Virus record (IMG/VR): IMGVR_UViG_3300023257_000007
Coordinates: 124,001 to 188,000 of that record
DNA length: 64,000 bases
Direction: 5' to 3' (one strand)
This document shows, piece after piece, positions 29,438 to 60,809 of the stretch; positions within the stretch are counted from its first letter, which is position 1, and the number at the start of each line of letters is the position of its first letter. Both the position numbers and the translations under genes were made by a program. Under the pieces are notes generated by a model. The model was given only the letters and a program-made list of their open reading frames with translations. It ran no database searches and had not been told where the DNA came from.

Positions 29438-30091
29438 TTATCTACTTAATAAACCTATTTTAGAATAAACATTTTTCCAATCATCCTCATTGTTTATTAT
29501 ATATTCAGGTTCTCTGGAATCTAAAATAGTTTCAGCATTTTCAATTGTTACATAATCAACGGCTTTTATTTTAATTCCATCATTAATTCTAACTCTATAA
29601 GTTTTAAATGTTTCACTCAAAATTTGTGCTATATATAAAGGAAAAGTACCATCATCAATATACATAACAGCAGAAAGTTTTGCATTTGGCATCTCAACGT
29701 ACAACTTATTCTCTGTATCTATCAAATGATATTTGGATAAGCTTTCTTTAATTCCGTTATGTTTAATAACATCACTATTCTTAACATAATAATAAGAATC
29801 TGTAGAAGTTTCTTTAAAAACTAATGATGCATCAATTTTTTTACAGAATTGATTTAACATTTTTCTTTGAAAATTGCCTTTATCTAATAAATTACTATTA
29901 ATTAATCCACTAAACTTATATTTATCTTCTAATATAACAACAATTTTTCTATTTGCATTATCATAATACAAACAATCTATATCCAACATATAATTAGATC
30001 TAGATAAACTTCTATGTCCTTCAGAAAAGACATTACTTTTACCCCATTTTCTTTTATAATCTTCAAATATGTTTTTAATTCTTTGTATCAT
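29438..30091 (-). CDS. Hypothetical protein
   Basis: 217-aa ORF overlapping the end of the CCA gene. Confidence 0.6.
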   Translation of the reverse strand: MIQRIKNIFEDYKRKWGKSNVFSEGHRSLSRSNYMLDIDCLYYDNANRKIVVILEDKYKFSGLINSNLLDKGNFQRKMLNQFCKKIDASLVFKETSTDSYYYVKNSDVIKHNGIKESLSKYHLIDTENKLYVEMPNAKLSAVMYIDDGTFPLYIAQILSETFKTYRVRINDGIKIKAVDYVTIENAETILDSREPEYIINNEDDWKNVYSKIGLLSR

Positions 30092-41578: not shown

Positions 41579-42328
41579 TTAAATTTTTTGATAATTGATA
41601 TCAAAATAATAATTAAACTTATAATTCTTAGAAGATTCAGTTTGATTATATGTCATAAACAATTCACCTAAACCATTACTAGGAAACTTCTTAACAACAT
41701 TTAAATTACTTTCCAAATCACCTTTTTGCTTCGCTTCAAATGTGTATTCTGGGTTATATTTCAAAACTGAACTTGTACCTATTTTTTGATCATTTTCAAT
41801 AGAAATATATTCAATATACATATCAATATTTAAAAATTTATATCTATCTAAAACATTCTTTTCTATATAATAATAAATAGATTGATTAATATCTTTATTT
41901 AACAAATCATCATAATAGACAGATTTAAATGCTCTATTCTCTTTAATTTTAACAAATAAATATTCCTTTAAAATTGTCTTAACATCAATGGTATATTCCC
42001 ATATAGTACTAATTTCTCTAATTTTGACGTTTTGTTGGGATTCTTTTATAGTATGATTATCATTTTTTAAAGACGTTAAATTCAATGTAAATACAGTTTC
42101 ATCTCCTACATGTGTTTCACAATCATAATATTGAAATCCATTATTTTTTACTAGATCTCTATCACCAGAAGTGAAAAATTGAGAATATTGTATTGTCTCA
42201 TTATCAATAATAACATCATCTTCGATTTCTAACATTTTAGAACCAAAAAAAGATTTCTCCTCTATCATATTAAGAGTACCAGGTACTCTAGAAGTTTTAA
42301 ATTTTCTTAGTATAAGATTATTTTTCAC
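41579..42328 (-). CDS. Putative structural protein
   Basis: 249 aa, coupled to the 1825-aa gene. Confidence 0.5.
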   Translation of the reverse strand: MKNNLILRKFKTSRVPGTLNMIEEKSFFGSKMLEIEDDVIIDNETIQYSQFFTSGDRDLVKNNGFQYYDCETHVGDETVFTLNLTSLKNDNHTIKESQQNVKIREISTIWEYTIDVKTILKEYLFVKIKENRAFKSVYYDDLLNKDINQSIYYYIEKNVLDRYKFLNIDMYIEYISIENDQKIGTSSVLKYNPEYTFEAKQKGDLESNLNVVKKFPSNGLGELFMTYNQTESSKNYKFNYYFDINYQKI

Positions 42329-45300
42329 TATGTTAAATTCTTTTTTGTATCATCTTTAGATGTATCTAAAACTTCTTTATCTGTAAATATGTAATATTCT
42401 TTATCCCAAGTTGATTTAAATATAAATCTTTCTACATAACTATAACCAAACTCATCAACCATAGGGTAAATTGATCTATCTTCTTCTGTATTTCTTATCT
42501 TTAATACATTTTCCACTGGGTTTATTTTAGAATAAATAATCTCAGAAACCTTACCAAAATCTTCCAGATTTTCATTAAACTTATAATTTCTTTCTAATGC
42601 ATTAAAATAATATTCACCTTCTGTTACTCTTGGCATAGTATAACATACTTGAACTTCAACATTATCAAAATATGCATTATAAGTTGGACTTGATATTGGT
42701 GTAGCCAAAAATACAACATCAAAATCACAATACACACTAAAATCTATATTTATTTCAATGTTACTAGAAGTAACTGCAGAACTTATATCTATACCAGAAA
42801 TTGTATATTTATCTATAATCCAATATGGATTATAAATTGTTGTTTTAGATAAATTATCAGAACTCGTATTATTTATCAAAATATCAACGAGATAGTCTTT
42901 AAAAAACAAATTCTTTTCAATGGATATTAACTTATAATATATAAAATCACCCTTTTTTTTAATAATAACATTAATTTCTGATATAATTGCCTCATTGGGA
43001 ATGTCAAAATTAAAATTAGATAATCTTAATGTATCTGAATATCCTGTTAATGTTACAACAAGACCCGCTGAAATATCAGGTATTAAAAAATCAATTTTAG
43101 CAGAAATATTATCACTTTTATCTAAAATATTTTCTTCATCAACCCAATTTATAACAGTAGTATAACCTGATGTACCACCAGTTAATCCATTTGTAGTTAT
43201 TTCAACATCACTAGCAAAAGATTTTTGACAAAATATTCCATTATGAGATGAATAATCTGTACCATCAAATAATTCAATATTTTTGAAAATAGGTTCATAT
43301 GGCCCACTATATCTATATATTTCTTTATTATAAATTTGTGTTTCACCATGTTGTTGAACCTTTTTACTTATGTCTTTCTCATTTATAGTAATTTTTCTTG
43401 AAATAGGTTCATTAATGTCATAATTAACAGACGCACTAGCATCTACAGGTTTATATTTATCATAAATATTAGTTCTTGGACCTTTCAATGCACTATGATT
43501 AAATGATTGTTTCTTGATAGTTAATAAATCTGGTCTACTAATAGAAACCATATATGGTGGGAAATCTTTGCCCCAAGACTCTAATTCTTCCATGGTACCA
43601 TTTGTAGTGGCACTTGGAACCATATTCATATAAGCATAATTACCATTTTCATCAATATAATGATAATATACATTTCTATCAAATCCATAAGTATTATTTA
43701 AATCATTTAAAGCAGATATTACATTTGAAGCAGTCAATGTAACAGTATTATAACTAATACCTGTATTATTATATGGTGTTCCATCTAATGCCTTAGCATA
43801 ATAATATCCATAATTCTCACCAAATATTTTAATATTATTTAAATCATATAAATCCTTAAACATTGTTAATTTTGTATTAACAACAATTAATAAATTTTTA
43901 TACTTATCATTTAAAAATATATCAATACCAGTATCAGATGTATCAATATAATTTTCATTAATAATTGCAGAACTTTCAAAATCTAATTCATTTACAACTT
44001 CATATAACTCATATGTAGCACCACAAACAACAAAATCAGAAAAATTAGATGTCATATCATCTTCCTCCCAATTATCTAATGAAACATAAATAGTACAACC
44101 AGTATCACCACTAAATTGATATATTTGTGCAGTTAATCTAGTAGAATCAATATAATAAGAACTTCCAGTTGAATAAAAATGAGAATAATCTCCAGTTGTG
44201 TCTATATCATAAAAATCATATAAAGGTAGAGTTAAACCTGCAAATGTAAAACCTGTGGTTTTTATATAATAATCTTTATAATCTATAAAACTAGCATCAT
44301 ATGATCTTTTTAATTTTAAAGGGCCATTGTTAACATAAGCTAAATCTGTAAAACTTGTTAAAGTCATAGTTTGTCCAGTAATAAAACCCCTAATACCTAA
44401 ATTTTCATAATGCCAATTCACAGTATCCATGTATCTTGTTTGATAAAAACTATATCCAGACACATCAACATAATCTGCAATAGTTCTTCCACTATCACCA
44501 TCACTATTATAAACTGTTTCAATATACTGATAACAAGGATTAAATATAATACTACACTTATATTCATCATATTTCTTTTTACCGGAAATTATATTATAAA
44601 TTTTATAATTAGAATCTCTAAATAAATTTGCAACAGAATCTAAATCAATTCTCAAACCTTTAAAAAGAGTTGAAGCTGCATTATAATTATTTGTTGTTTT
44701 AAATATTGAATATTTAGTAGTAGATTTAATATATAGTTGACTCTCATATTCATAATACATCTTATTCTTGAAAAAATAATCAAAATAATCAAAAGTAGAA
44801 CCAACATATAAACTCAAATTAAATTTTTGACTATCATCATTCATTAAATTTGTTTCAATATTAGTACTTTGTTGAACATACTTTTCATTAGTACCATTAT
44901 CATGCAAACCACCAACACGATACATATAATCCATATTTTTATCTGTTACACTTGGAGTATCTTTATAAATATTAGTTGTTTTATTGAATTGTGAGCCTAC
45001 TTTATTATTATTATTTAATTTGTATGAATAATCACTGTGACTTATACTATTCATAAAACCCCATTTACAAACTGTCTCATTTTTAATCCACATAGGATTA
45101 ATATCTTTTGTTTCTGTTATTTGATATAATTCATCTGTAGAAATATACTCTGACGAAACATTCATTATCTTATTTTGACCAGGAACACCTTCTGGCATAA
45201 CTTTAAATTGTTTAGGAGTTGAATTATCTCTAAATTCAGTTGTATATAATTTATGTTCATCAGTATCAACATATTCTGTTTTCTCATAATCAAAATCAGC

Positions 45301-47805
45301 ATAATGTGTATCAACTCTATCAAAATCCCAATCTTTAATATCACTAAATTTAACTCTATAAACAGGATACATTAACGGTTTTCTTAATTTCTTATTTACT
45401 CTTATATCTTTAACTACAGAATATTCTGAATCATTTGATTTAATCCAATATTCTAATTTGGAACTATTAGATTTTATAGCATAATCAGTATCTATATAAT
45501 ACTTTAACTCAATTTCATCATTTTGATCTATCGGCAAATTATATATATTTACATATGTTAATGAAGTATTAGAATCAGTTAAAGCTACAATATTTTCATT
45601 ATAAAACACACCACCAGAATATATATTATCATAATCAATACTAGGACTTAATAAATAATCAGTTAAAGTATCAGTTAAAGTATCATATTTCATTAATCCA
45701 GTACTAGCACTATTTTCAAACCACTTAAAAATTACATTATTATTATTATCATAAAAAACATGAGATGTTGAACCAGTAATATCATAACTAGTTGTTTGTG
45801 TAATATTTTTTTCATAATATTCTTTTTTAATAAACAAACCTTCAGTAGTACCCAAAAAAATTGTTCCATCATCTTTTAAATCAAATGTTAAAGGAATACC
45901 TTCCATAGACGTATTTGCAGAATTATATTCAACAGAAGCTATAGGTTCTAAATCATAATAAACTGTAAAAATACCTGCATCTAATCCATTACTAATAACA
46001 CTATATAAATTATTATTTTGTACTTCAATTTTACAATTAAAAACATCTCCTGTTACATTTGTATTATAAAATGTAACATCATATTTATTAGAAAGTTTTA
46101 CAGACCAAGATACAGTTAAAGTACCACCAGATCGAGCACAGGCAAAAATTGTAGAACCTGTAACAAAAATACTTTTAATTTGTTCAGCATCTTCTATACC
46201 AGAATTTAAATTAGTAATTGTATCTTCTACACCACTATCAAAATCTTTAATCCACATTCCTTCATATGTACCAACATACAATACATTATTATCTAAAAAT
46301 AATGATTGCACACCTGAATTTGGTAATGAAGAATTTGAAGTAGTATATGAATTTAATAAAACTAAATCTATATCATATATGAATAAACCATCATCAGCAC
46401 CAATGTAAATCTTATCATCATTAAAATAAACTACATTAAATGGTGGAATTGATTCTGTGATTGATGTATAAGAATAAGCAATATCTGATTTCTCAATAAT
46501 ATTTTGTTCAACTTTTAAAACATGAAACTTGTTGTCAATATCAACTAAATACAAATCACCATATAATCCCTTGAAATATCCATCATCATCAATATACGTA
46601 TCACAAGTAAATTCACCAGTTCTGCCATTTACAACATTTATATAAGATGTACCAGTATTTTGAAAAACAATATCAACAATATTATCACTATGAATATCTG
46701 TAATAGATAAATCATAATCACTTATAATTTTATATGTATCAACATTATCATCACTCTTTTTAACTACTCTATATAAATCTTCTAAAGCATAAATATAATA
46801 CTCATTATTATTATCCCAAGTATTAATAAAAGGCATGGTTGAACCAGTTGTTCCACTAACAACAAATATATTATTTACAATATCTAAACCATCTATTAAT
46901 GTAGGTGGTTGATATGAAGTTAAGTTACAAACCTCATCCATTTGTTCCACATAAAAACCATAATATCTATTAACAGAATATTTATTTAAACCGAAAGGTG
47001 ATGCAGGTGTATCATCATATAAAAATTTAAAGTTGACAATGCTTGGAAATATCAAATTATTTAATTGATACCCCTCCGTTATAAATTGTTCTAATTGAAA
47101 ATGTGGTTGTTCATAATATAATTTATCATCTAAAAAGAAATCCTTTTCAGTATAAGTACCATAATCATAATCAATACCATACCATCTACTAAAATTATAT
47201 TTTTTAGCATCAAACTCAAATGGAGATTCAGGAAATCTGTCATTTTCAGTAAAATTTCTATACATCCAATATCCTAAAGGTGATTGATAAGTTAAATCAA
47301 ATGTTGTAACACATTTCCATTTATCCACAATCTCACTTCTAAAATTATTTTTAGTTAAATTTACTATTTCATATGAATTACTATCATAAACTGCAGAATC
47401 ATCAACTCTTAATATAATAAAATTTGAAGGTAAATTGTTAGGTCTAATATATAGAGGAGCCAAATATTCAAATTCTTCTTCATACCACTGATCTTGAATA
47501 TTTTTAGCACCAGCATAATAAATATCATCAAATTGACAATCATATGTATTATACATTTTATCACTATCATCTTCATATTTAACTTTAAAAGCTAAATTAG
47601 AAGGCAAACCTTTATAAAATATAGGTAATTGATCCTCCAAATAAGTATTCTTATTCATAGAAAAATGTTTAAATCTTTCATCACTTAATTGTCTATTAAC
47701 CTTGAAAGATTCTAAATATAAGTTATAATCAGTATTAACCACTACACTTACATTTGTTGTAAGTGTAGGATTAGTTCTTATTATTTGAAAACTTTTATCT
47801 ATCAT
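42328..47805 (-). CDS. Very large putative virion protein with a central beta-propeller-like segment
   Basis: 1825 aa; blade-like repeats 'NSSLPNSGVQSLFLDNNVLYVGTYEGM', 'DDKIYIGADDGLFI', 'DDGTIFLGTTEGLFI'. Confidence 0.55.
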   Translation of the reverse strand: MIDKSFQIIRTNPTLTTNVSVVVNTDYNLYLESFKVNRQLSDERFKHFSMNKNTYLEDQLPIFYKGLPSNLAFKVKYEDDSDKMYNTYDCQFDDIYYAGAKNIQDQWYEEEFEYLAPLYIRPNNLPSNFIILRVDDSAVYDSNSYEIVNLTKNNFRSEIVDKWKCVTTFDLTYQSPLGYWMYRNFTENDRFPESPFEFDAKKYNFSRWYGIDYDYGTYTEKDFFLDDKLYYEQPHFQLEQFITEGYQLNNLIFPSIVNFKFLYDDTPASPFGLNKYSVNRYYGFYVEQMDEVCNLTSYQPPTLIDGLDIVNNIFVVSGTTGSTMPFINTWDNNNEYYIYALEDLYRVVKKSDDNVDTYKIISDYDLSITDIHSDNIVDIVFQNTGTSYINVVNGRTGEFTCDTYIDDDGYFKGLYGDLYLVDIDNKFHVLKVEQNIIEKSDIAYSYTSITESIPPFNVVYFNDDKIYIGADDGLFIYDIDLVLLNSYTTSNSSLPNSGVQSLFLDNNVLYVGTYEGMWIKDFDSGVEDTITNLNSGIEDAEQIKSIFVTGSTIFACARSGGTLTVSWSVKLSNKYDVTFYNTNVTGDVFNCKIEVQNNNLYSVISNGLDAGIFTVYYDLEPIASVEYNSANTSMEGIPLTFDLKDDGTIFLGTTEGLFIKKEYYEKNITQTTSYDITGSTSHVFYDNNNNVIFKWFENSASTGLMKYDTLTDTLTDYLLSPSIDYDNIYSGGVFYNENIVALTDSNTSLTYVNIYNLPIDQNDEIELKYYIDTDYAIKSNSSKLEYWIKSNDSEYSVVKDIRVNKKLRKPLMYPVYRVKFSDIKDWDFDRVDTHYADFDYEKTEYVDTDEHKLYTTEFRDNSTPKQFKVMPEGVPGQNKIMNVSSEYISTDELYQITETKDINPMWIKNETVCKWGFMNSISHSDYSYKLNNNNKVGSQFNKTTNIYKDTPSVTDKNMDYMYRVGGLHDNGTNEKYVQQSTNIETNLMNDDSQKFNLSLYVGSTFDYFDYFFKNKMYYEYESQLYIKSTTKYSIFKTTNNYNAASTLFKGLRIDLDSVANLFRDSNYKIYNIISGKKKYDEYKCSIIFNPCYQYIETVYNSDGDSGRTIADYVDVSGYSFYQTRYMDTVNWHYENLGIRGFITGQTMTLTSFTDLAYVNNGPLKLKRSYDASFIDYKDYYIKTTGFTFAGLTLPLYDFYDIDTTGDYSHFYSTGSSYYIDSTRLTAQIYQFSGDTGCTIYVSLDNWEEDDMTSNFSDFVVCGATYELYEVVNELDFESSAIINENYIDTSDTGIDIFLNDKYKNLLIVVNTKLTMFKDLYDLNNIKIFGENYGYYYAKALDGTPYNNTGISYNTVTLTASNVISALNDLNNTYGFDRNVYYHYIDENGNYAYMNMVPSATTNGTMEELESWGKDFPPYMVSISRPDLLTIKKQSFNHSALKGPRTNIYDKYKPVDASASVNYDINEPISRKITINEKDISKKVQQHGETQIYNKEIYRYSGPYEPIFKNIELFDGTDYSSHNGIFCQKSFASDVEITTNGLTGGTSGYTTVINWVDEENILDKSDNISAKIDFLIPDISAGLVVTLTGYSDTLRLSNFNFDIPNEAIISEINVIIKKKGDFIYYKLISIEKNLFFKDYLVDILINNTSSDNLSKTTIYNPYWIIDKYTISGIDISSAVTSSNIEINIDFSVYCDFDVVFLATPISSPTYNAYFDNVEVQVCYTMPRVTEGEYYFNALERNYKFNENLEDFGKVSEIIYSKINPVENVLKIRNTEEDRSIYPMVDEFGYSYVERFIFKSTWDKEYYIFTDKEVLDTSKDDTKKNLT

Positions 47806-47819
47806 AATTTATAATAATT

Positions 47820-50800
47820 TTATTGAAAACCTACTGATACTTGTGATTGTGTTGATATATAATTAGCCGTTCTGTGTTGTTTCATATTAAATATCAAAGT
47901 AAATTGGAACGGTCTAATACTGTTCTCAGTTTCTACAAATATTTTCAACGGTCTCTTTAATATACGTGAAACAGGTTTTTCAGTTGGATTTATAGTAAAT
48001 GAACTTCCACTTACAGCATCAAACTTAAAATATAAATTTATTGGTATAATCATCTCTTCTTGACCATTTATTAATTTCAACTTTTCCTGTCCTGTGTCAA
48101 TTAAATCTGATATATCTATAACTAATGGATATATACTAGATAAAAATGCATTTTGGTTTGTTAATGTCCCATCAGTCCAACTAATACCAGTTAACAAATT
48201 GAACGTATAATCATCTCTAGTAAAAGTTGTCCCTGTTAATCCAAGATTTGAACCATATGTTCCACCATCAGCATTTAACCAATTATAAGCAGTTGCTTTA
48301 TCAGACTCTGTTATACCTGAATATAAATTCTGTCCGTTGTGATTATCAGAAAACCAAAGAAATTGATTGTCTTCTTGATTATGTAGATAACCATCAGCAT
48401 CAATATAACAGGATGAATCATCTGTAAATTGAAAGAAACTATTTGTTCCACCAACTGTATAATTTCTATCAGAAAATAAACCTAATGGGTTATTTTGTGC
48501 AATATTCTTCAAACTAATATAATAATCTTTTATAACATAAATATTATTATAATAAATTCTATCTGCAGTAGCACCACTTATTTCTCCATAATCTTCACAT
48601 TCAACTATAATATTAGTTTCCGAATTATTACCAATTTCAGTTTCTGTTGTACCTTTAAATAATGTAACAAGAAGTTCACCTTTAGCTCTACTAACTTGTT
48701 CTTCTAAAGAAGATATCTTATTTGTTAATGTTTCTAAATAATCAAATAAATTAATTAAATTACCTTGAGCATCTCTAAATGACGTTGCCAAAGTTTTATC
48801 ATTATGTGCATAATAACTATCATTTTGAGTAAAACTATCTCTAACGTGTCTATAAACACCTTTAGCATCCATTTCATTATCAAATTCAACTCTTACTGAT
48901 TCTTGACTATTTTGTAATGTTATTAATTGAGAATCATCATTAGTGTTTTCATATTCATCAGGAAAATCAATCTTAACAATATCCGACCATTCTGATTCAA
49001 TCAAAGCATCGGGCCAACCAACCTCAGAAATAGATTTAACTTTTATTTCAATAGATTCATTTTCCTTAATGGGAATATCTACTTGATTTATATTTGGTTT
49101 TTCTGCATTTGCAACATCTTCAACAACCCAATACCACACATTTTTGGTACTATCAAAACTTCTCTCTCTAGGTTTTGTTACATATTCTTTCCAATTAGAA
49201 AAGAAACCATTAGTATTTTGTGTTTGTAATATAGTTTGATTACTTAAAGGTATTTTTTGACCAGATGCAGTTGTTATAACTGTATTAGTTGGTGATGGTG
49301 TCATACCAATAGAAGGTGCATTAATTTGTGAACTTCTAGGAGTAAATTCAGCACTACTACTTTCAGGATTATTTATAACCGATCCACTTGTTGTTGGATC
49401 TGGTTTTAAGTTTGGTTGCGTTAATAAACTTGTATCAATAGTTAAACCTTGTTGACCAGATAAATCTTCTAAATTCACAGTAGGTTTAATATCAAAACTC
49501 TCTATTGGATTAGTTTGACCATCTTTAGCACTATATCTATACTGAATTTTAAATGCAACCACATCTTGTATTTTATCTTCAAGACTTCTAGCCATTGGAA
49601 TATCAAAGAAACCTCTTAATCTATATTTAGGGCTTGCAGATAAAGTTGTAACAACATTAGAAATTTGATTAACAATTGAGCCATATTGTTTAGATTCACT
49701 CTCTTGTTGTGTTATAAGTCTATTTAACTCATTTTGAGATTTATTTTTTTCACCAATACTTTTATATTGTTTTGTGTTTAATTCTTTATTTTTTTCAATA
49801 ATAGAATCATTTAATTGGTTTAATCTAGACTTAATAGATTCTTTTCTTGTATGTAAATCTTTCTTTTCTTTTGAATTTCCATTATCTGTAAGATGTTTAT
49901 TAATTTGTACAACTTTAAAATTATCTATTTCCAATACTGGTTTATTTGGAATTAATGCCTCATCAGTTGGTGTTTGTCTTCTTATTAAATCTTTTAATAA
50001 TTTACCATAATCATATATATTATCTAAATAATAACTTGTCAAATCTATCGTATTATCCGTATTTAATACTAAATCATTTGTATAAAATGCACTACCTTGA
50101 GACCAAACACTACCAATTATATTATTATCAGTATTTACAGGTTTCATAAATACAAGATTATATTCATTATAACCCACACCAATATTAACAGATTTATCTA
50201 ACTCACCAGCTGAGTATATCTTTAAAACATCTGTTCCAACAGGAATAGGATCATAACCTTCAACTCTTTCAACTATTATCTTAGGCGTAGATGAAGCTTT
50301 ACTAATTTCAATTATTTTATATCTAGTATTACTTTCTTTTTTATTTATTATTATTTCATCATTAATAGATAATTCTTTATTAACACCATCTTTAGTTCTA
50401 TAAGTTAGAGTATTTAAGTGATACCAAAATTTCTTTCTTATTGTATCATCCTCTGTATTTAAAACACTAAAAAAACCAACATTATTTAATGTTTGTAAAT
50501 TAATATCATAAATATCTTCATCCAAATATTTATAAGGGTCCAAATTATCAACAACACCTGGTTGAGCCAAGTACCAATTAATAAAAGTGTCATAATTAAT
50601 ATCTGATTTATTCAAAAATGTGTCTATAAAACTATTTAAAGAATTTCTTCCTGTCTCTGTTAATTGTCCATAACTACCAACTTGAAATTTTACAATATGT
50701 CTCCTTACCAAAACTTTCTTATTCCTATCATCAATTTTACCAGTTAAATCAAAATTTACATGTATGTTAGGGTTAATTAATTCTTCGAAAAACCAGTTAG

Positions 50801-51170
50801 TTTTACTTTCAAATTTATCAATGTTATTTAAATTACTAATAGGTACAGGTTCTCTATTAAGATCAACTTGATAGATCTTTTTTGTAGTTTGTCCATCTAT
50901 AATATAAGTTGAACCTTGACCTTCTCCGCCTGTTAATTTTTTAATATTTTGATTTAGTAAATCTATTTGTGATTTCAAATAACCAACTGTAGGCATCTGA
51001 AATGTTGAATTAGTATAATTACCACTATTATCTTTTATCACCCAATCAACTGTTACATTACTATCATTAGTTGATAGTAGATCATTTATTGATGATAAAA
51101 TTTCTATACTATTTTTATTAAGAATAGCAATATCTTCTAATAATTTAACAAAGGAATTTTCTTGACTCAT
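47820..51170 (-). CDS. Large putative virion/baseplate protein with coiled coils
   Basis: 1116 aa; late-type promoter TTTAATATATAA upstream; S/T/P-rich insert near 49230-49420. Confidence 0.5.
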   Translation of the reverse strand: MSQENSFVKLLEDIAILNKNSIEILSSINDLLSTNDSNVTVDWVIKDNSGNYTNSTFQMPTVGYLKSQIDLLNQNIKKLTGGEGQGSTYIIDGQTTKKIYQVDLNREPVPISNLNNIDKFESKTNWFFEELINPNIHVNFDLTGKIDDRNKKVLVRRHIVKFQVGSYGQLTETGRNSLNSFIDTFLNKSDINYDTFINWYLAQPGVVDNLDPYKYLDEDIYDINLQTLNNVGFFSVLNTEDDTIRKKFWYHLNTLTYRTKDGVNKELSINDEIIINKKESNTRYKIIEISKASSTPKIIVERVEGYDPIPVGTDVLKIYSAGELDKSVNIGVGYNEYNLVFMKPVNTDNNIIGSVWSQGSAFYTNDLVLNTDNTIDLTSYYLDNIYDYGKLLKDLIRRQTPTDEALIPNKPVLEIDNFKVVQINKHLTDNGNSKEKKDLHTRKESIKSRLNQLNDSIIEKNKELNTKQYKSIGEKNKSQNELNRLITQQESESKQYGSIVNQISNVVTTLSASPKYRLRGFFDIPMARSLEDKIQDVVAFKIQYRYSAKDGQTNPIESFDIKPTVNLEDLSGQQGLTIDTSLLTQPNLKPDPTTSGSVINNPESSSAEFTPRSSQINAPSIGMTPSPTNTVITTASGQKIPLSNQTILQTQNTNGFFSNWKEYVTKPRERSFDSTKNVWYWVVEDVANAEKPNINQVDIPIKENESIEIKVKSISEVGWPDALIESEWSDIVKIDFPDEYENTNDDSQLITLQNSQESVRVEFDNEMDAKGVYRHVRDSFTQNDSYYAHNDKTLATSFRDAQGNLINLFDYLETLTNKISSLEEQVSRAKGELLVTLFKGTTETEIGNNSETNIIVECEDYGEISGATADRIYYNNIYVIKDYYISLKNIAQNNPLGLFSDRNYTVGGTNSFFQFTDDSSCYIDADGYLHNQEDNQFLWFSDNHNGQNLYSGITESDKATAYNWLNADGGTYGSNLGLTGTTFTRDDYTFNLLTGISWTDGTLTNQNAFLSSIYPLVIDISDLIDTGQEKLKLINGQEEMIIPINLYFKFDAVSGSSFTINPTEKPVSRILKRPLKIFVETENSIRPFQFTLIFNMKQHRTANYISTQSQVSVGFQ

Positions 51171-51289: not shown

Positions 51290-52045
51290 TTATAAATGCG
51301 GATCAAAATTAAAAAAAGTTATCTGTTCTTCTATTATTCTAAAAAAGAATTTTACTTCATTATTTTCTTTGTCAACATTTGTATATGGTGTAACTTTTTC
51401 AATCCAAGATTTATCTTGTGCAAAATGTATTAACGATTGGTTTAAAAGTGTTTCATCTTTGTGATCTTCTTTAAATAAATCTAAAGACATAGTTTTACTA
51501 ATTCTTAATTCATCTAATATTTTAACTTCAGATTTTACATTAGACCACCAATCCACAAAATCTTTTTTAACTTGATGTAATAAATTTAAATTCTTAAGAT
51601 TAGAATCTTTTAATCTCAACTTAATTGATTTAACACATTGGTGTCTTGGAAAATCATACCTTAAAAATCTATCATTAATTTTAAATTTCCCTATTTTATA
51701 GACTAGATTTTTTATACTATTATAGAATCCATATTCTAAAATTTTATTCTTTATACCTATAAAAAATGATAATTTATCGTCTTTAATACTTCTTAATGTC
51801 AAAAATGCAGTTTCTAAACTTTTCTTCATTTCTAATTCACCAAGTAATTCATTAATCTTCGTTATTCTATCAGTTGAAAAAAAATAGTAAAAACTACCAG
51901 TATTTAAATAGTTTTGGAAAGCAAAATCATTACCATGTTTATTAACCAAATCAAAAAAAATTCTAAATCCTTCTTTACCAGCTAACAATGGTTCTATTTG
52001 TATTTGTTCATTTATAAATTGTATATATGTATTAATAACTTTCAT
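51290..52045 (-). CDS. Hypothetical protein with CTS-like leader (MKVINTYIQFINE)
   Basis: 251 aa; ATGA coupling. Confidence 0.65.
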   Translation of the reverse strand: MKVINTYIQFINEQIQIEPLLAGKEGFRIFFDLVNKHGNDFAFQNYLNTGSFYYFFSTDRITKINELLGELEMKKSLETAFLTLRSIKDDKLSFFIGIKNKILEYGFYNSIKNLVYKIGKFKINDRFLRYDFPRHQCVKSIKLRLKDSNLKNLNLLHQVKKDFVDWWSNVKSEVKILDELRISKTMSLDLFKEDHKDETLLNQSLIHFAQDKSWIEKVTPYTNVDKENNEVKFFFRIIEEQITFFNFDPHL

Positions 52046-52377
52046 AATAATCCAAGTTTAATTGCTTCTATTTTTGTATTTAAATCATTAATATTTTTAA
52101 TATCCTCAGATTTACAAAATACATAGTTCGATTCACCACCCAAATTCTCTTCAATGCCAGTGTATGTTATTAAATTGTAATCTAGTTGATAAATTATACC
52201 TTTTATATAATTTTTAAAAGATTTTGGTTGTTGATCTGAATAACCATGCCCATCTTGCCAATATATCTTATTATTGAAAAACATTTCTTGCAATCTATAA
52301 AATTCTGATTTATCACACGATATAATTAAATATTTTTCATTCGTTGTTCTTTCATTATATGTTTTTAAATACTTCAT
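52042..52377 (-). CDS. Hypothetical protein with CTS-like leader (MKYLKTYNE)
   Basis: 111 aa; ends IEAIKLGLL. Confidence 0.65.
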   Translation of the reverse strand: MKYLKTYNERTTNEKYLIISCDKSEFYRLQEMFFNNKIYWQDGHGYSDQQPKSFKNYIKGIIYQLDYNLITYTGIEENLGGESNYVFCKSEDIKNINDLNTKIEAIKLGLL

Positions 52378-52964: not shown

Positions 52965-54596
52965 ATGATCACAATAAACGATCTTAACATACACTTCCCA
53001 CTAAAACTTATACCAAGAAACCAACAAATAGAATCACTACATTTTGTTAAAGAATCAATTAATACTGGTAATAAATTTGTACTTCTTAATATACCAACAG
53101 GTGTGGGTAAATCATATTTCGCAATAATGTTTATGAACTGGTATAGAAACTTTGTTAATGAAGATGCAAAATTTGATATTTTAACAAACTCTAAAGTACT
53201 ACAAAACCAATATATAAAAGATTATGTTTTTATAGAAAATTTTAAAGGTAGAAGTAATTATAAATGTGAACCTTTTAACACAGACTGTGAACAAGGAAAA
53301 GAATTATGTTCAATTATGAAAAGAAAATGTTCAGATTGTCCATATGATATGGCAAAAGAAAAATGGAAAAACAGTAATATCTCACTTACAAACTTCCATT
53401 TATTTAACACAATTGCATTATATTTGCCATCTTTATTAAAAGAAAGATCTTCTAATGTTCTATTAATAGATGAAGCACACGATTTTGAAAATGTTTTTTG
53501 TGATTTCATTTCAACAAGATTAAATGTTAGAGGTCTTAAAATGATGGGTTTTACATTATCAGAATTAGAAAAAATAGACAAACAAATACAAAAAGTAAAA
53601 AGGATTGACCAATATGTTAATTTACTTGAACGAGTTATAATACCAGACTTAAATGAAAAAGATGTACTATTTTCAAAAGAGGTTATAGAAAAATCAATTA
53701 CATCAAAAAGAAAAACAGAAATAACTAAATATATATCTCAAATACAAACAAACAAATTAAAATATAAAAACTTTATCGAAGAATTCAAAAAAAATAAAAA
53801 TAACTGGGTTCTAGATATTAATCTTAACAAAAAAGCCAAAATATATTCCGGAATTGAATTAATAACACAACCAGTATGGGGTAATGAATATTTAAAAGAA
53901 TCTATATGGGATAAATATGACCATGTTATATTTATGTCTGGCACCATTCTAAATAAAGAAATGTTTAGCTATATAAATGGACTGGATAAAGAAGTTTCAA
54001 CATATTATGAAATGAATAGTCCATTTTCTATTAAAAGAAGACCAATATATTATATAAAAGCTGGTAAAATGACTTATAATGAAAAAATAGAAACATTCAA
54101 AAATCAAAAAGAATGGATTAAAAAAATTATAAAGAAAAACGCTAAAAGAAAAGGTATAATACATACAACTACATATGAATTCGCAGATATGTTAAAAACC
54201 CAAATTTATAACAAAAGATTAATTTTTCATGAAACAAAAAACCGTGAAGAAATGTTAAATAAACATATTGATAGCAAACAACCGACAATATTAGTAAGCC
54301 CAAGTATGAATAGTGGTGTTGATTTAAAAGATGATTTAAGCAGATTTCAAATTATAATGAAAATACCTTTCCCAAATATTAGTAGCAATAAGATTAAGCA
54401 AAGACAAAAAACAAATAAAGAATGGTATAACTGGAAAACATGTGTTGATTTTATTCAATCTTATGGTAGGTCATTGCGATCTGAAGAGGACTGGGCTGAA
54501 ACGTATGTACTAGATTCTAGTTTATCAACGTTACTTAAATATAATAGTAATTTAATTCCGAGATATATCACTGACGCTATTAAAGTTCTAAAATAA
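52965..54596 (+). CDS. DinG/XPD-like SF2 helicase
   Basis: PTGVGKS, Cys cluster (CEP...C...C...CSDCPY), DEAH, MSGT, GVDL, KIPFP, QSYGRSLR. Confidence 0.85.
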   Translation: MITINDLNIHFPLKLIPRNQQIESLHFVKESINTGNKFVLLNIPTGVGKSYFAIMFMNWYRNFVNEDAKFDILTNSKVLQNQYIKDYVFIENFKGRSNYKCEPFNTDCEQGKELCSIMKRKCSDCPYDMAKEKWKNSNISLTNFHLFNTIALYLPSLLKERSSNVLLIDEAHDFENVFCDFISTRLNVRGLKMMGFTLSELEKIDKQIQKVKRIDQYVNLLERVIIPDLNEKDVLFSKEVIEKSITSKRKTEITKYISQIQTNKLKYKNFIEEFKKNKNNWVLDINLNKKAKIYSGIELITQPVWGNEYLKESIWDKYDHVIFMSGTILNKEMFSYINGLDKEVSTYYEMNSPFSIKRRPIYYIKAGKMTYNEKIETFKNQKEWIKKIIKKNAKRKGIIHTTTYEFADMLKTQIYNKRLIFHETKNREEMLNKHIDSKQPTILVSPSMNSGVDLKDDLSRFQIIMKIPFPNISSNKIKQRQKTNKEWYNWKTCVDFIQSYGRSLRSEEDWAETYVLDSSLSTLLKYNSNLIPRYITDAIKVLK

Positions 54597-54630: not shown

Positions 54631-54996
54631 TTATTTATTGTATGATCCTGTGTTTGTCCAATCTCTTTTAGTTACCAATCCTGTTTGTTTTTTAAATTCT
54701 GTTTCTTGTGTTATTGATAAATTTTTATAACCATTTACAAGATTTGTAACTTTATCTAAACCTTTTTGATATGTTTCATCCGTTTCATCTTCAAATTTTT
54801 TATACCATTTTTTAGTAATAGCTGACCACATAGGTTCACTACCCACCTCCGGATGATTTTCCTTATAATCTTGTAAATATTTTGTGCATTCTTCATAATC
54901 ACCACAATTATCTATGTAATCCAACACATCTTGTAAATCATTATCATCTTGTAAATCATTATCTTGTAAATTTTCAAATTTTTTTAAGTGTTTCAT
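54631..54996 (-). CDS. Hypothetical protein with CTS-like leader (MKHLKKFENL)
   Basis: True start probably 54996; upstream AAAAAAAACGATT is shared with the 646 gene; LQD(D)ND mini-repeats. Confidence 0.65.
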   Translation of the reverse strand: MKHLKKFENLQDNDLQDDNDLQDVLDYIDNCGDYEECTKYLQDYKENHPEVGSEPMWSAITKKWYKKFEDETDETYQKGLDKVTNLVNGYKNLSITQETEFKKQTGLVTKRDWTNTGSYNK

Positions 54997-55030
54997 AATC
55001 GTTTTTTTTTTGTTGTCATTTGACATATAT

Positions 55031-55651
55031 TTAAAATTTTTGGATAAACCAAAAATTATCTCTTCCCCAAGTGGTCTTTACAATTTTCCCTTTAGCTTGT
55101 AAATCAGTTAAAACATTATTAACATCAGCTTCAGAAAAACCAACATGACCAGCAATAGTATAAGAACTCATCTTAACACCTTTATCTTTCATAACATGTA
55201 AAACATCATTACCTATTTCATTAATATCTTTAGAAATACCTTTAGTTTTTCCTAAAGTATTTAAACCTTTTGGTCCTTCACTTTGTAAATCATTAATAGT
55301 CTTAGAAATACCTAAAACTGGTTTTGCAATAGCTGGTCCTTTAGCTTTTGTATCATTCAATTGATCTAAACTATAACCTGGTTGATTACCTTCAAATTTT
55401 TGAATAAATTCAAATTTATCGTGTCCTAATATATTATTCTTAACGATATGACCACCGTCTTCTAGACCTTTTAGTATATTGTTAACTTGAGCTACAGTAA
55501 CAGCACCACCCAAAGCGGTTTTAATTGACATAGCAGTTGCAGGAACGCCTTTATCTTTCATTGCTGATATAACTTGATCTTTTAAATCACCTATTTCTTT
55601 TGCTACTTTATTAGCTTCTGTGATAAACTCTGTTAATGTTTTAATTTTCAT
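55031..55651 (-). CDS. Tandem winged-helix (Z-alpha-like) protein with CTS-like leader
   Basis: Leader MKIKTLTEFITE|A; two similar domains each containing MKDKGV...VNN(I/V)L..L...G.IVK...F.FIQKF. Confidence 0.6.
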   Translation of the reverse strand: MKIKTLTEFITEANKVAKEIGDLKDQVISAMKDKGVPATAMSIKTALGGAVTVAQVNNILKGLEDGGHIVKNNILGHDKFEFIQKFEGNQPGYSLDQLNDTKAKGPAIAKPVLGISKTINDLQSEGPKGLNTLGKTKGISKDINEIGNDVLHVMKDKGVKMSSYTIAGHVGFSEADVNNVLTDLQAKGKIVKTTWGRDNFWFIQKF

Positions 55652-55696
55652 AATAACAATTATTATTTTTTCTTTTACTTATATATAAAAGTTAAA

Positions 55697-55755
55697 AATT
55701 CATTTTTTTAATTCAATACTATATATAAAATTCGATTACCTAAAATTTTTAAACT
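55697..55755. repeat. 59-bp exact direct repeat, copy 1, containing a late-type promoter
   Basis: aattcatttttttaattcaatactatatataaaattcgattacctaaaatttttaaact, identical to 56531..56589. Confidence 0.95.
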
Positions 55756-55756
55756 A

Positions 55757-56530
55757 TCATAATTTTATATTTGGAAATAGGTTTTTAACATTATCATAAT
55801 AAAGATTTCTAATATCATCTATAGATATATTAAATTCTTCTAATAAATTAGTTGGAGAATGTTTAGTTTTACCTGTCAGAACATCTTCAAAAAAATTTAA
55901 TTTTTCGTCTAATAAAGTTTTAAAATCTGATTTTTGTCTTTTTGCCATTTTATTTATACCTCTTAAGTATGCTAAAATTTCATCTGGTGTGATGATTTTA
56001 TTTAATAATCCATTTTTTTCTTTAATCATTATGTTATATAAATGTTTATTATTATAAGTAATATTATATCTTTTAGATAATTTATCATTATAATCTGATT
56101 TAACCATGTCGATTATTTCATCTGTAAAGTATTTTTGGAAATGTGACATTTCATGATCAACTAATTCAGATATTTTATAAGATAATTCCTCATATATTTT
56201 TTTAATATTGAGTGGATTTAATTTAATTTCTTCAATAGGAATACTAAATGTTATTACACTTACAAATATCATAAAATTTGTAGTTTTTGGTAAAATTTGA
56301 CCACCAACTTTAACTGAATAATTATCACTTTTTTTAAAATTGATATCAATATCAAAATAAAATCTAATATCATCAAATTTTTTTTCCTCTTTAATTTTTA
56401 TACTCTTTGAATCATTAATATTTTCAACATTCTCAATTATATCAACACATTTATTAAAAAAATATTTTTGTAATGATTTTCTAATCTCTCTCTTTAAATT
56501 AAAATATTCGTAATATTTAATATACTTCAT
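55757..56530 (-). CDS. Putative zincin metalloprotease (HExxH) with CTS-like leader
   Basis: MKYIKYYEYF leader; ELVDHEMSHFQ and a downstream helix DEILAY. Confidence 0.55.
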   Translation of the reverse strand: MKYIKYYEYFNLKREIRKSLQKYFFNKCVDIIENVENINDSKSIKIKEEKKFDDIRFYFDIDINFKKSDNYSVKVGGQILPKTTNFMIFVSVITFSIPIEEIKLNPLNIKKIYEELSYKISELVDHEMSHFQKYFTDEIIDMVKSDYNDKLSKRYNITYNNKHLYNIMIKEKNGLLNKIITPDEILAYLRGINKMAKRQKSDFKTLLDEKLNFFEDVLTGKTKHSPTNLLEEFNISIDDIRNLYYDNVKNLFPNIKL

Positions 56531-60416: not shown

Positions 60417-60809
60417 TTATAATGTAGGTAAATTTGAAGTTGGTCCTGACATTAATCGACCAGATTGTTTTGCTGGCATATAAACCCATTTTGTATGTTT
60501 TTTATCAATACCAATCAATCCTCTAAATTTATCTACTTCTGCTTCTTTTACTAATTCATCAACATCTTTTTTAGTTAACTTTAATTTAGTTCTATGTGTT
60601 TGTAAAATCTTTTGTTTATGTTTAGTATTTTTATTTAGTTTATTAAATTTTTCTAATATATCACCTTCTACACCAAGTTTTGTCATCAATTCAGTCCAAC
60701 CTTTTTTTACTTTTTCTAAATTTGCTTTATCTTCTTTTGACATAAATGAAAAACCTTCATCTATTTGATTCTCTTTTGAGAATGATTCATATGTCATTAA
60801 ATGTTTCAT
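60417..60809 (-). CDS. Basic hypothetical protein with CTS-like leader (MKHLMTYESF...IDE|G)
   Basis: 130 aa; TTTAATATATAA upstream. Confidence 0.7.
   Translation of the reverse strand: MKHLMTYESFSKENQIDEGFSFMSKEDKANLEKVKKGWTELMTKLGVEGDILEKFNKLNKNTKHKQKILQTHRTKLKLTKKDVDELVKEAEVDKFRGLIGIDKKHTKWVYMPAKQSGRLMSGPTSNLPTL

What the first reader, a model, noticed from the sequence alone, without database searches (positions are those of the whole stretch)
55031..55651. Capsid-tagged protein with two Z-alpha-like winged-helix domains
Seen: leader ...FITE|A followed by an internal duplication. Domain 2 (VLHVMKDKGVKMSSYTIAGHVGFSEADVNNVLTDLQAKGKIVKTTWGRDNFWFI) aligns by eye along its length with ADAR1 Z-alpha ([55 protein letters not shown]), keeping the Asn, KGK and Trp. 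The key Tyr and the basic residues of the recognition helix are not conserved, so canonical Z-DNA/Z-RNA binding is doubtful. Known: Z-alpha domains are typical of eukaryotic immunity and poxvirus E3. Inference: an injected nucleic-acid-coating or decoy protein protecting the incoming genome.
Basis: partly seen in the sequence, partly recalled or inferred. Interest (0 to 1): 0.68.

Follow-up and report, generated by a model that had tools for sequence, protein, structure and literature searches.

The report
Megaphage tandem Z-alpha-like winged-helix protein
A giant salt-lake phage has a real, conserved 206-residue protein with two small winged-helix domains shaped most like Z-alpha domains but lacking the residues that grip left-handed DNA; its T4-like N-terminal tag and late-type promoter suggest, without proving, that it is packed into the phage head.

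Summary
Window 55031-55651 (minus strand) is a 206-aa gene under purifying selection (dN/dS 0.09-0.14). It has two winged-helix domains that are 41% identical (E 1e-14), joined by a roughly 55-residue disordered linker.

The host genome is a 345-kb fragment (about 48% complete) of a Mahaphage/Lak-related megaphage from salt-lake and marine metagenomes.

Z-alpha membership fails:
- The Pfam score is below cut-off.
- The Tyr177 position is never aromatic in 22 domain copies.
- Pro192 and Pro193 are replaced by Asp and Asn.
- The Asn173 position is variable.
- Published bacterial Z-alpha-like domains lacking the Asn and Tyr do not bind Z-DNA.

The capsid tag is plausible but untested:
- The leader MKIKTLTEFITE|A matches the T4 capsid-targeting sequence MKTYQEFIAE at 7 of 10 positions.
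- All homologues keep a hydrophobic-x-Glu site.
- The genome encodes a T4-type prohead protease.
- The gene and its orthologues carry the ATATATA[AG] motif that also precedes the capsid, protease, sheath and baseplate genes.

A DNA-coating role is doubtful, because family pI ranges from 4.4 to 9.2 and the recognition helix is acidic. The family is tiny: 15 phage relatives among 1.84 billion representative proteins.

The parts
55031..55651 (-). Whole gene, 206 aa plus stop (protein P0001)
   Evidence: ORF list and translation. dN/dS 0.09-0.14 against orthologues on L029 and L030. Orthologues P0003-P0006.
55616..55651 (-). N-terminal leader, residues 1-12 (MKIKTLTEFITE), followed by Ala13. Candidate capsid-targeting propeptide with a hydrophobic-x-Glu cleavage site (I-T-E12).
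   Evidence: Seven of ten positions are identical to the T4 CTS MKTYQEFIAE, allowing a 2-residue insertion (T4 sequence from PMC8442874). Three of the four T4 positions reported as critical (4, 7, 8, 10; PMC9026906) are identical: F9, I10 and E12. The fourth is hydrophobic (L6 for Tyr4). All homologues keep the aromatic motif followed by hydrophobic-x-E. There are no substitutions in 13 codons among three orthologues, although dS elsewhere is 0.46-0.70. Function not tested.
55388..55594 (-). Winged-helix domain 1, residues about 20-88 (H-S-H-H-S-S)
   Evidence: Secondary structure of the full-length model. 41% identical to domain 2. PHROG 15148 'HTH DNA binding protein', E 4e-6. Lacks the wing Trp (Glu instead) and has Lys at the Tyr177 position.
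55226..55387 (-). Linker, residues 89-142. Predicted disordered, rich in Gly, Pro and Lys, with an extra copy of the pre-helix motif GISKxIN[DE][LI].
   Evidence: pLDDT about 30. Net charge +3. dN/dS 0.12-0.28, so still constrained. The same doubled motif (K[GN]ISxF[LI]DD[IV]D) is in P0007 and P0008.
55034..55225 (-). Winged-helix domain 2, residues 143-206. The Z-alpha/TFE-like domain that defines the family.
55679..55686 (-). ATATATAA motif 35 nt upstream of the ATG. Candidate late-type promoter element.
   Evidence: The motif ATATATA[AG] is 7-fold enriched upstream of ORFs, with a sharp peak near -30. It precedes the major head protein, head maturation protease, tail sheath and baseplate operon. 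It is also present before the orthologues in L001 (-27), L002 (-31), L023 (-53) and L024 (-28). It is near-identical in L029 and L030. Promoter activity and timing are inferred.
55719..55726 (-). Second motif copy, ATATATAG, 75 nt upstream in the same 105-nt intergenic spacer
   Evidence: Conserved in L029 and L030. Role unknown.
54631..55026 (-). Downstream gene, 4 nt after the stop and probably co-transcribed. Small acidic protein whose likely true start (Met11) gives the tag MKHLKKFENL.
   Evidence: ORF list and sequence read. The A-rich 'aaaaaaaaaacgatt' stretch before Met11 resembles the leaders of other tagged genes.

Best explanation
P0001 is a late-expressed megaphage protein made of two minimal winged-helix domains of the Z-alpha/TFE structural type, held on a flexible linker.

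The most likely course is as follows:
1. The gene is transcribed with the virion genes from an ATATATAA-type late promoter.
2. Its 12-residue N-terminal leader works like the T4 capsid-targeting sequence and takes the protein into the prohead core.
3. The T4-type (S77) prohead protease removes the leader after Glu12.
4. The mature two-domain protein stays inside the head with the DNA and enters the cell with it.

Once in the cell, its two winged helices would bind nucleic acid or a partner protein in an ordinary, non-Z-specific way.

Shown: the gene, the duplication, the fold class, the absence of the Z-contact residues, the protease gene, and the promoter-like motif with its conservation.

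Inferred: late timing, targeting, cleavage, injection and the ligand.
For: - Fold: a confident domain model, with Z-alpha, TFE, Hop2 and RPC39 winged helices as best matches.
- Leader: matches the T4 CTS at 7 of 10 positions, including F, I and E at the positions T4 genetics found critical.
- Conservation of the leader: an [IL]K[KN]Fx[DE][FL]xxE-type leader ending in hydrophobic-x-E is kept in all 15 phage homologues, although the rest falls to 30-50% identity.
- Protease: an 811-aa protein has an N-terminal head maturation protease domain. It matches phrog_207 at 1.3e-29 and Pfam Peptidase_S77 at 23.5 bits. Proteases of this type cleave after Glu (PMC5694885).
- Promoter: the ATATATA[AG] motif near -30 precedes the major head protein, protease, sheath and baseplate operon. 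It is absent at that position before the recA-like, DnaB-like and RNR genes and topoisomerase II. It is conserved before five orthologues.
- Genome-wide: 12 ORFs carry [EDQ][FY][ILV]xE within the first 15 residues, three times the internal rate. Five of these have the late motif (Fisher p 0.019).
- Neighbourhood: the adjacent same-strand genes are also tagged.
Against: - There are no proteomic, transcript or binding data, and no RNA runs hold the sequence.
- P0001's leader does not score with the PSSM of the commonest tag in this genome, MKYLKTYNE (score -0.5). That tag shows no enrichment for the late motif (p 0.5).
- The protease match is under Pfam's cut-off.
- The motif also precedes homing endonuclease and glycosyltransferase genes, so 'late' is not the same as 'virion'.
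- The gene sits in a replication neighbourhood, divergent from topoisomerase II in 4 of 4 two-domain orthologues.
- T4 internal proteins are strongly basic, whereas this family ranges from pI 4.4 to 9.2.
- A leader-like motif also recurs inside longer homologues. This could mean something other than N-terminal targeting.
- The zero synonymous change in the leader could reflect constraint on translation initiation rather than on the peptide.
Confidence: 0.38

Rival explanations
1. A cytoplasmic late-phase DNA-binding protein that is not packaged. It could be a transcription or packaging accessory, or an architectural factor, whose two winged helices bind B-form phage DNA. It could act like a TFE-type factor on the polymerase-promoter complex. 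The N-terminal motif would then serve some other shared purpose, such as translation start, docking or turnover.
For: - The best sequence-profile match to any solved protein is archaeal TFE (E 4.9e-6; phmmer 0.014).
- PHROG matches are to 'HTH DNA binding protein' and 'transcriptional regulator'.
- Synteny with topoisomerase II and an XPD-like helicase is conserved.
- The leader codons and the upstream 100 nt are frozen at DNA level, which fits regulatory or translational constraint.
- Basic residues cluster in the wing strand and the pre-helix arm (columns 5, 7, 61, 64).
Against: - It carries the same promoter type as the genes it would regulate.
- Helix 3 is acidic, with Asp at the wing tip.
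- It offers no explanation for a T4-CTS-like leader with a hydrophobic-x-E site kept across all homologues.
- No phage RNA polymerase catalytic motif was found in the 345 kb held.
Confidence: 0.3
2. The winged helices are protein-protein adaptor modules, as in RPA32 C-terminal domain, ESCRT-II, ScpB or the cullin WH-B domain. They would bridge two partners, for example replication or packaging proteins, with no nucleic-acid binding.
For: - Pfam RPA_C scores exactly at its cut-off (22.6 bits) and also matches P0012.
- Two-domain Foldseek matches to ScpB, ESCRT-II and RPC34.
- The domains are neutral, the recognition helix is acidic, and some family members are very acidic (net -32, -14, -9).
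- The conserved short linear motif K-G-I-S-x-F-L-D-D is doubled in the linker.
Against: - Those two-domain matches came from a low-confidence model (pLDDT 52.6) with rmsd 13-17 A.
- No partner was identified.
- The nearly invariant Asn in helix 3 and the Lys/Arg in the wing strand are typical of nucleic-acid contacts.
Confidence: 0.17
3. A genuine Z-DNA/Z-RNA (or other non-B) binding protein: a phage counterpart of tandem Z-alpha proteins such as ADAR1, ZBP1, PKZ and poxvirus E3.
For: - Z-alpha domains are the top structural matches.
- The profile hits ZBP1 and ADAR1 Z-alpha at 3e-4 to 2e-3.
- hhalign against a true Z-alpha repeat gives probability 91.7%.
- The tandem architecture is shared, and Trp is kept in domain 2.
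Against: - The Tyr177 equivalent is Thr or Lys in P0001 and never aromatic in 22 copies.
- Pro192 and Pro193 are replaced by Asp and Asn.
- The Asn173 equivalent is not conserved.
- Pfam z-alpha scores 14.9 bits against a cut-off of 21.
- Replacing the Tyr, as in ADAR1 Z-beta, abolishes specific Z binding (PMC11293857).
- Bacterial Z-alpha-like domains lacking the Asn and Tyr failed to bind Z-form or to convert B to Z (PMC11298590).
- The E 1e-6 hit to P0020 sums three near-identical repeats of about 15 bits each.
Confidence: 0.05

Closest known systems
Z-alpha / Z-beta domains (Pfam PF02295: ADAR1, ZBP1, PKZ, poxvirus E3, CyHV-3 ORF112, ASFV I73R)
   Same: Minimal winged helix of about 65 residues (a1-b1-a2-a3-b2-b3). 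It superposes at 0.9-1.3 A over 60-63 residues. It is used in tandem on a flexible linker. It has the same hydrophobic register in helix 3 (V-x-x-V-L-x-x-L) and the wing Trp in domain 2. There is weak but repeated sequence similarity.
   Different: No Tyr177 equivalent, no Pro-Pro in the wing, a variable Asn173 position, and an acidic helix 3. The Pfam score is below cut-off. The host is a bacteriophage rather than a eukaryote or a large eukaryotic DNA virus. It most resembles Z-beta and the published bacterial 'Z-alpha-like' domains that do not bind Z-form.
Archaeal TFE / TFIIE-alpha winged helix (PDB 1q1h) and RNA polymerase III RPC39/RPC34 winged helices
   Same: Best sequence-profile match among solved structures (E 4.9e-6, 29.7 bits). 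It aligns through helices 1-3 and the wing, including a Trp-Phe-Ile wing strand. RPC34 also uses tandem winged helices.
   Different: No zinc ribbon or further TFE domains. No cognate multi-subunit polymerase motif was found in the genome fragment. Identity is only about 26%.
T4 internal proteins IPI, IPII, IPIII and their capsid-targeting sequence
   Same: Short N-terminal leader starting MK, with an aromatic-hydrophobic-x-Glu end (EFITE|A versus EFIAE|). Late-type promoter. A T4-type prohead protease gene in the genome. The same genome has many unrelated small proteins sharing N-terminal tags.
   Different: No sequence relation beyond the leader. T4 internal proteins are not winged helices and are strongly basic. 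Packaging and cleavage here are untested. The commonest tag in this genome (MKYLKTYNE) differs from P0001's leader.
Pfam DUF7343 (PF24034), an uncharacterised winged-helix domain
   Same: The only Pfam model that P0001 passes at its curated cut-off (35.7 versus 27.6 bits, domain 2).
   Different: The other family members score only 13-21 bits, so the link is to the general winged-helix class. The family has no known function and gives no mechanistic help.

Membership tests
Z-alpha (PF02295) | Compact a1-b1-a2-a3-b2-b3 winged-helix fold that superposes on solved Z-alpha domains | tested here: met
Z-alpha (PF02295) | Score above Pfam's gathering cut-off | tested here: not met
   14.9 bits against a cut-off of 21, E 0.028. 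No other family member lists z-alpha at E up to 0.1.
Z-alpha (PF02295) | Tyr177 (ADAR1 numbering) in helix 3, which gives Z-specificity | tested here: not met
   The equivalent is Thr182 in domain 2 and Lys in domain 1. Across 22 domain copies the column holds E, K, T, S, D, N, Q and I, and is never aromatic.
Z-alpha (PF02295) | Asn173 in helix 3 | tested here: inconclusive
   Asn is present in both P0001 domains (N178 and N57), but in only 10 of 22 family copies; the others are H, Y, S, C, A, E or K. The nearly invariant Asn is one residue later, at the Arg174 position.
Z-alpha (PF02295) | Pro192-Pro193 in the wing | tested here: not met
   The equivalents are Asp198 and Asn199. The Asp is conserved (D/E in 19 of 22).
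Z-alpha (PF02295) | Trp195 in the wing | tested here: inconclusive
   Trp201 is in domain 2 and in all 17 C-terminal-type domains. Glu replaces it in all five domain-1-type copies.
Z-alpha (PF02295) | Binds Z-DNA/Z-RNA or drives B-to-Z conversion | not testable with these tools
   Needs circular dichroism or EMSA. Precedent: bacterial Z-alpha-like domains without the Asn and Tyr were inactive (PMC11298590).
T4-type capsid-targeted internal head protein | N-terminal leader of about 10 residues resembling MKTYQEFIAE | tested here: met
   MKIKTLTEFITE has 7 of 10 positions identical, allowing a 2-residue insertion. The T4 sequence is from PMC8442874 and the critical positions from PMC9026906.
T4-type capsid-targeted internal head protein | Cleavage site ending in Glu (hydrophobic-x-Glu) after the leader | tested here: met
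   I-T-E12|A13. Homologues have V-T-E, F-N-E, L-N-E, F-T-E, I-N-E and I-A-E at the same place. Only the motif is shown. Cleavage after Glu by this protease class is from PMC5694885.
T4-type capsid-targeted internal head protein | A T4-type (S77) prohead protease encoded by the phage | tested here: met
   G000:5467-7902, 811 aa. Residues 4-200 match phrog_207 'head maturation protease' at 1.3e-29. Pfam Peptidase_S77 scores 23.5 bits, under the cut-off of 27.
T4-type capsid-targeted internal head protein | Expressed late, with the head genes | tested here: inconclusive
   It shares the ATATATA[AG] upstream motif with the capsid, protease, sheath and baseplate genes, and the motif is conserved in orthologues. 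There are no transcript data.
T4-type capsid-targeted internal head protein | Present in virions in processed form and ejected with the DNA | not testable with these tools
   Needs virion mass spectrometry. No cultured relative carries the gene.
DUF7343 (PF24034) | Score above Pfam's gathering cut-off | tested here: met
   35.7 bits against 27.6 for residues 149-199. The six-frame search gives 29.2 bits. Other family members score below the cut-off.
TFE / TFIIE-alpha | Extended winged helix followed by a zinc ribbon, acting on an archaeal or eukaryotic-type RNA polymerase | tested here: not met
   The winged helix aligns at E 4.9e-6. However, there is no zinc ribbon in the 206 residues, and no polymerase catalytic motif in the genome fragment.

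The most novel reading that the evidence does not exclude
This would be the first bacteriophage branch of the Z-alpha lineage. It would be a tandem Z-alpha/Z-beta-type protein loaded into a megaphage head by a T4-like targeting leader and delivered with the genome. There it would recognise a non-B or torsionally stressed nucleic-acid form through a contact set different from the canonical Asn-Tyr-Pro-Pro-Trp. It would link the phage winged helices to the Z-alpha domains of eukaryotes and their large DNA viruses.
Probability: 0.07. Interest if true: 0.8.

Novelty: new variant of a known kind. Interest (0 to 1): 0.42.

Why it matters
Z-alpha domains are known from animal innate immunity, from large eukaryotic DNA viruses and, in inactive 'Z-alpha-like' form, from bacteria. 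The two survey papers read here do not mention phages. A phage family whose nearest structural neighbours are Z-alpha domains, yet which lacks the Z-contact residues, gives a natural out-group for asking which residues make a winged helix Z-specific.

The leader may matter more for phage biology. If it is a working capsid-targeting sequence, then this megaphage clade carries dozens of small, unrelated tagged proteins, which would point to a very large injected-protein repertoire. In that case the tag would be a simple computational handle for listing that repertoire in uncultured huge phages.

If the leader is not a targeting signal, the protein is just one more small phage winged-helix protein of unknown target.

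Tried and rejected
- tblastn of P0001 against 50,697 phage records found no match. A profile search of the complete 735-kb Mahaphage LR756501 also found none, and the gene next to its topoisomerase II is unrelated. The family is therefore confined to a subclade.
- The first full-length AF2 model was poor (pLDDT 52.6). Its two-domain Foldseek matches (ScpB, ESCRT-II, YceH; rmsd 13-17 A) were not relied on.
- I tested whether P0001's leader is an instance of the genome's dominant MKYLKTYNE tag using a PSSM. It is not (score -0.5).
- I tested whether strictly tagged genes are enriched for the late motif. They are not (8 of 45 versus 62 of 441, p 0.5).
- I checked whether the tagged proteins are one paralogous family. 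BLASTP of their bodies shows they are not, apart from one pair.
- I looked for a phage multi-subunit RNA polymerase to support a TFE-like role. There is no DFDGD-type motif and no Pfam hit for the 1116-aa and 1825-aa neighbours.
- I looked for RNA data. No RNA run holds the locus.
- Literature searches for the tag strings found nothing.
- The ESM Atlas look-alikes (DUF1627, phage MarR-like, DsrD, PKZ) all scored under 0.9 and were treated only as leads.
- The E 1e-6 hit to the triple Z-alpha protein P0020 was discounted, because three near-identical repeats are summed.

Full report
**What is there**

Window 55031-55651 carries, on the minus strand, an ATG-started ORF of 206 codons. Nothing of 40 aa or more lies on the other strand.

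Residues 16-86 and 139-206 are 41% identical (E 1e-14), so the internal duplication is real. Against two metagenomic orthologues of 88-89% identity, dN/dS is 0.09-0.14 overall. It is 0.06-0.13 in the two domains and 0.12-0.28 in the linker. This is therefore a real, constrained protein-coding gene.

The first 13 codons show no substitution at all, although dS elsewhere is 0.46-0.70. The 100 nt upstream are almost identical in the three sequences.

**Where it lives**

The window is part of a 344,634-bp IMG/VR record with 25% G+C, estimated about 48% complete. It encodes:
- a major head protein, a tail sheath and a baseplate spike;
- RecA-, DnaB- and RNR-type genes;
- a fused 1087-aa topoisomerase II;
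- an 811-aa protein whose first 200 residues are a head maturation protease.

The closest records are the 634-735-kb 'uncultured phage' genomes LR756501-4 and LR745206, followed by Lak phages, Sphingomonas phage PAU, and Tenacibaculum, Chryseobacterium and Flavobacterium phages. This is the Mahaphage clade, predicted to infect Bacteroidetes (PMC7162821). Near-identical DNA occurs in salt-lake metagenomes and one marine metagenome. No RNA run holds it.

**The family**

A word-index search found only four relatives. An exhaustive profile search of 1.84 billion representative proteins found 16 hits at E up to 0.001. Fifteen are phage-like proteins of 84-376 aa.

All share the C-terminal winged helix, with consensus DKG[VI]xMSTYxI...V.NVL..L...K[IV].K...G.D.[FY]W. 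It is preceded by K[GN]ISxF[LI]DD[IV]D.

Longer members add a Lys/Glu-rich linker and a divergent N-terminal winged-helix-like domain. P0001 and its closest kin instead have a copy of the C-terminal domain.

There is no paralogue elsewhere in this genome and none in the complete 735-kb relative. All four two-domain genes whose context could be read (the window, P0005, P0006 and P0008) lie divergently next to topoisomerase II. In three of them an XPD-like helicase is nearby.

**Is it Z-alpha?**

By fold, that is a fair description. A domain model built on 22 domain copies is confident (pLDDT 84.1, pTM 0.71).
- Foldseek ranks the Hop2 winged helix first (3.6e-5). Next come PKZ and ADAR1 Z-alpha (1.9e-4 to 1e-3; TM up to 0.78/0.91; rmsd 1.0-1.4 A), RPC39, TFE and ZBP1.

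By sequence:
- The family profile scores TFE best (4.9e-6), then ZBP1 Z-alpha (3.4e-4) and ADAR1 Z-alpha (2e-3).
- hhalign against one repeat of P0020 gives 91.7% probability. P0020 is a true triple Z-alpha protein (Pfam 1.3e-31).
- P0020's E 1e-6 in the big search is inflated, because three near-identical repeats are summed.
- Pfam's own z-alpha model gives P0001 only 14.9 bits against a cut-off of 21. DUF7343 passes (35.7 bits) in P0001 but not in the other members.

The residue test is the clearest. With the register fixed:

| ADAR1 position | P0001 domain 2 | Across the family |
|---|---|---|
| Tyr177 | Thr182 (Lys in domain 1) | never aromatic in 22 copies |
| Pro192-Pro193 | Asp198-Asn199 | the Asp is conserved |
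| Asn173 | Asn178 | Asn in only 10 of 22; the near-invariant Asn sits at the Arg174 position |
| Trp195 | Trp201 | kept in the C-terminal domain type only |

The literature read here names exactly these residues as what makes a winged helix Z-specific. It also reports that bacterial Z-alpha-like domains lacking the Asn and Tyr neither bind Z-form nor convert B to Z (PMC11298590; PMC11293857).

I therefore file the domain as Z-alpha/TFE-like in fold and not as a Z-alpha family member. I put canonical Z binding at about 5%.

**Is it capsid-tagged?**

The T4 capsid-targeting sequence is MKTYQEFIAE (PMC8442874). T4 genetics place targeting mainly at residues 4 and 7, and processing at residues 8 and 10 (PMC9026906).

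P0001's MKIKTLTEFITE|A matches 7 of 10 positions if two residues are inserted. The matches include Phe, Ile and Glu at three of those four positions.

Every homologue begins with a similar [IL]K[KN]Fx[DE][FL]..E motif and has a hydrophobic-x-Glu site at the same place. T4-type and phiKZ-type prohead proteases all cut after Glu (PMC5694885), and this genome has such a protease.

An 8-mer, ATATATA[AG], is 7-fold enriched upstream of ORFs, with a sharp peak near -30.
- It precedes the major head protein, the protease, the sheath, a tail-spike-like protein and the baseplate operon.
- It does not precede the recA-like, DnaB-like or RNR genes or topoisomerase II at that position.
- From my own knowledge, it resembles the T4 late promoter TATAAATA.
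- It lies 35 nt before P0001's ATG, and 27-53 nt before the orthologues in four other contigs.

Twelve ORFs in the genome carry [EDQ][FY][ILV]xE within the first 15 residues, three times the internal rate. Five of these twelve have the late motif (p 0.019).

This is a coherent case, but every functional step is inferred. Against it:
- P0001's leader does not score with the PSSM of the genome's dominant tag.
- That dominant tag shows no late-motif enrichment.
- The motif also precedes homing endonuclease genes.
- The family is not uniformly basic.
- Leader-like motifs recur inside longer homologues.

**What it binds**

This is unknown. Both domains are about neutral (net 0 and +1), and the linker carries +3. 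Family members range from net -32 to +10.

Helix 3 is rich in Asp and Glu, and the wing tip has a conserved Asp. Conserved Lys/Arg lie in the first wing strand and in the arm before helix 1.

This does not look like a histone-like coat. It is compatible with weak or structure-dependent nucleic-acid binding, or with protein docking.

**Verdict**

The tag is plausible but untested, and the coating or decoy role is unsupported.

My best single account is a late, leader-targeted head-internal protein with two Z-alpha/TFE-type winged helices, at about 0.38. The rivals are:
- a non-packaged late DNA-binding factor (0.30);
- a protein adaptor (0.17);
- a true Z binder (0.05).

It is a new, very small phage family of a very common fold.

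Noticed in passing
Whole genome G000. In the window: 197-646, 689-961, 52042-52377, 55757-56530 and 60417-60809 (all minus strand): About 40 of 486 ORFs begin with a near-identical tag M[KR][YH]LKT[YF]NE. This is 45 N-termini above the 99th percentile of internal scores, where about 5 would be expected. Their bodies are unrelated by BLASTP. Synonymous codon variation (TTA/CTT, TAT/TAC, AAA/AAG) shows that the constraint is on the peptide. The tag may be a capsid-targeting or other sorting signal on a very large scale. Similar tags occur in the 735-kb relative LR756501.
   Followed up: partly
Genome G000, mostly 300-343 kb. In the window: 52042-52377 (ends ...EAIKLGLL): 56 of 486 ORFs, mostly about 100 aa, end in ...[EN][AGS]xK[LM]GLL*. 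Fifteen of these also carry the N-terminal MKYLKTYNE tag. Where such genes abut, the C-terminal motif, stop codon and next tag form a conserved junction of about 50 nt (aaataaattaggattattataATGAAATATTTAAAAACATATAATGAA). This could be a large family with a shared C-terminal peptide, or a cassette-shuffling junction.
   Followed up: partly
Genome-wide. In the window, for example upstream of 8711, 24064, 39393, 51170, 55651 and 56530 (minus-strand genes): A promoter-like motif [T]TAATATATA[AG] lies about 23-38 nt before 70 ORFs, where about 4 would be expected. These include the head, protease, sheath and baseplate genes, three homing endonuclease genes and a glycosyltransferase gene. It resembles the T4 late promoter.
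   Followed up: partly
G000:5467-7902 (minus strand), outside the window: The head maturation protease domain (residues 4-200) is fused to a C-terminal extension of about 600 residues with no family match. This may be a scaffold fused to the protease, as in herpesvirus assemblin-scaffold.
   Followed up: no
Window 30075-31382 (minus strand): A tRNA nucleotidyltransferase (CCA-adding type; phrog_2244, 3e-45, match from residue 44) has a 43-residue N-terminal extension. The extension starts MNKLYKYSEFLNEN, the same CTS-like [EDQ][FY][ILV]xE class as P0001.
   Followed up: no
Window 42328-47805 and 47820-51170 (minus strand): Two giant proteins (1825 and 1116 aa) lie behind a late-type motif and have no Pfam match. 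The 1116-aa protein belongs to phrog_29329 and is shared with LR7565xx megaphages, Lak phages, Sphingomonas phage PAU gp264 and Tenacibaculum, Chryseobacterium and Flavobacterium phages. It is a clade marker of unknown function.
   Followed up: partly
Locus L001 11739-14405, compared with window 52965-54596: The XPD/Rad3-like helicase next to the gene is 543 aa here. In the relative it is 888 aa with a LAGLIDADG domain, so it probably carries an intein there.
   Followed up: no
Homologues P0006-P0017 (loci L002, L023 and others): Leader-like motifs ([IL]x[KT]F[ST][ED][ML]xxxE) recur internally, just before the C-terminal winged-helix module. The pre-helix motif K[GN]ISxF[LI]DD[IV]D occurs twice about 35 residues apart, and in P0001 as GISKTINDL and GISKDINEI. 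This may reflect fusion of once separate tagged genes, or internal processing sites.
   Followed up: no
Locus L024 5150-5404: A single-domain 84-aa relative (P0018) has a canonical tag MKNIKNFDQFNE|A and the same late-type motif at -28. It sits beside a 5'-3' exonuclease gene rather than topoisomerase II, and was seen on 7 contigs.
   Followed up: partly
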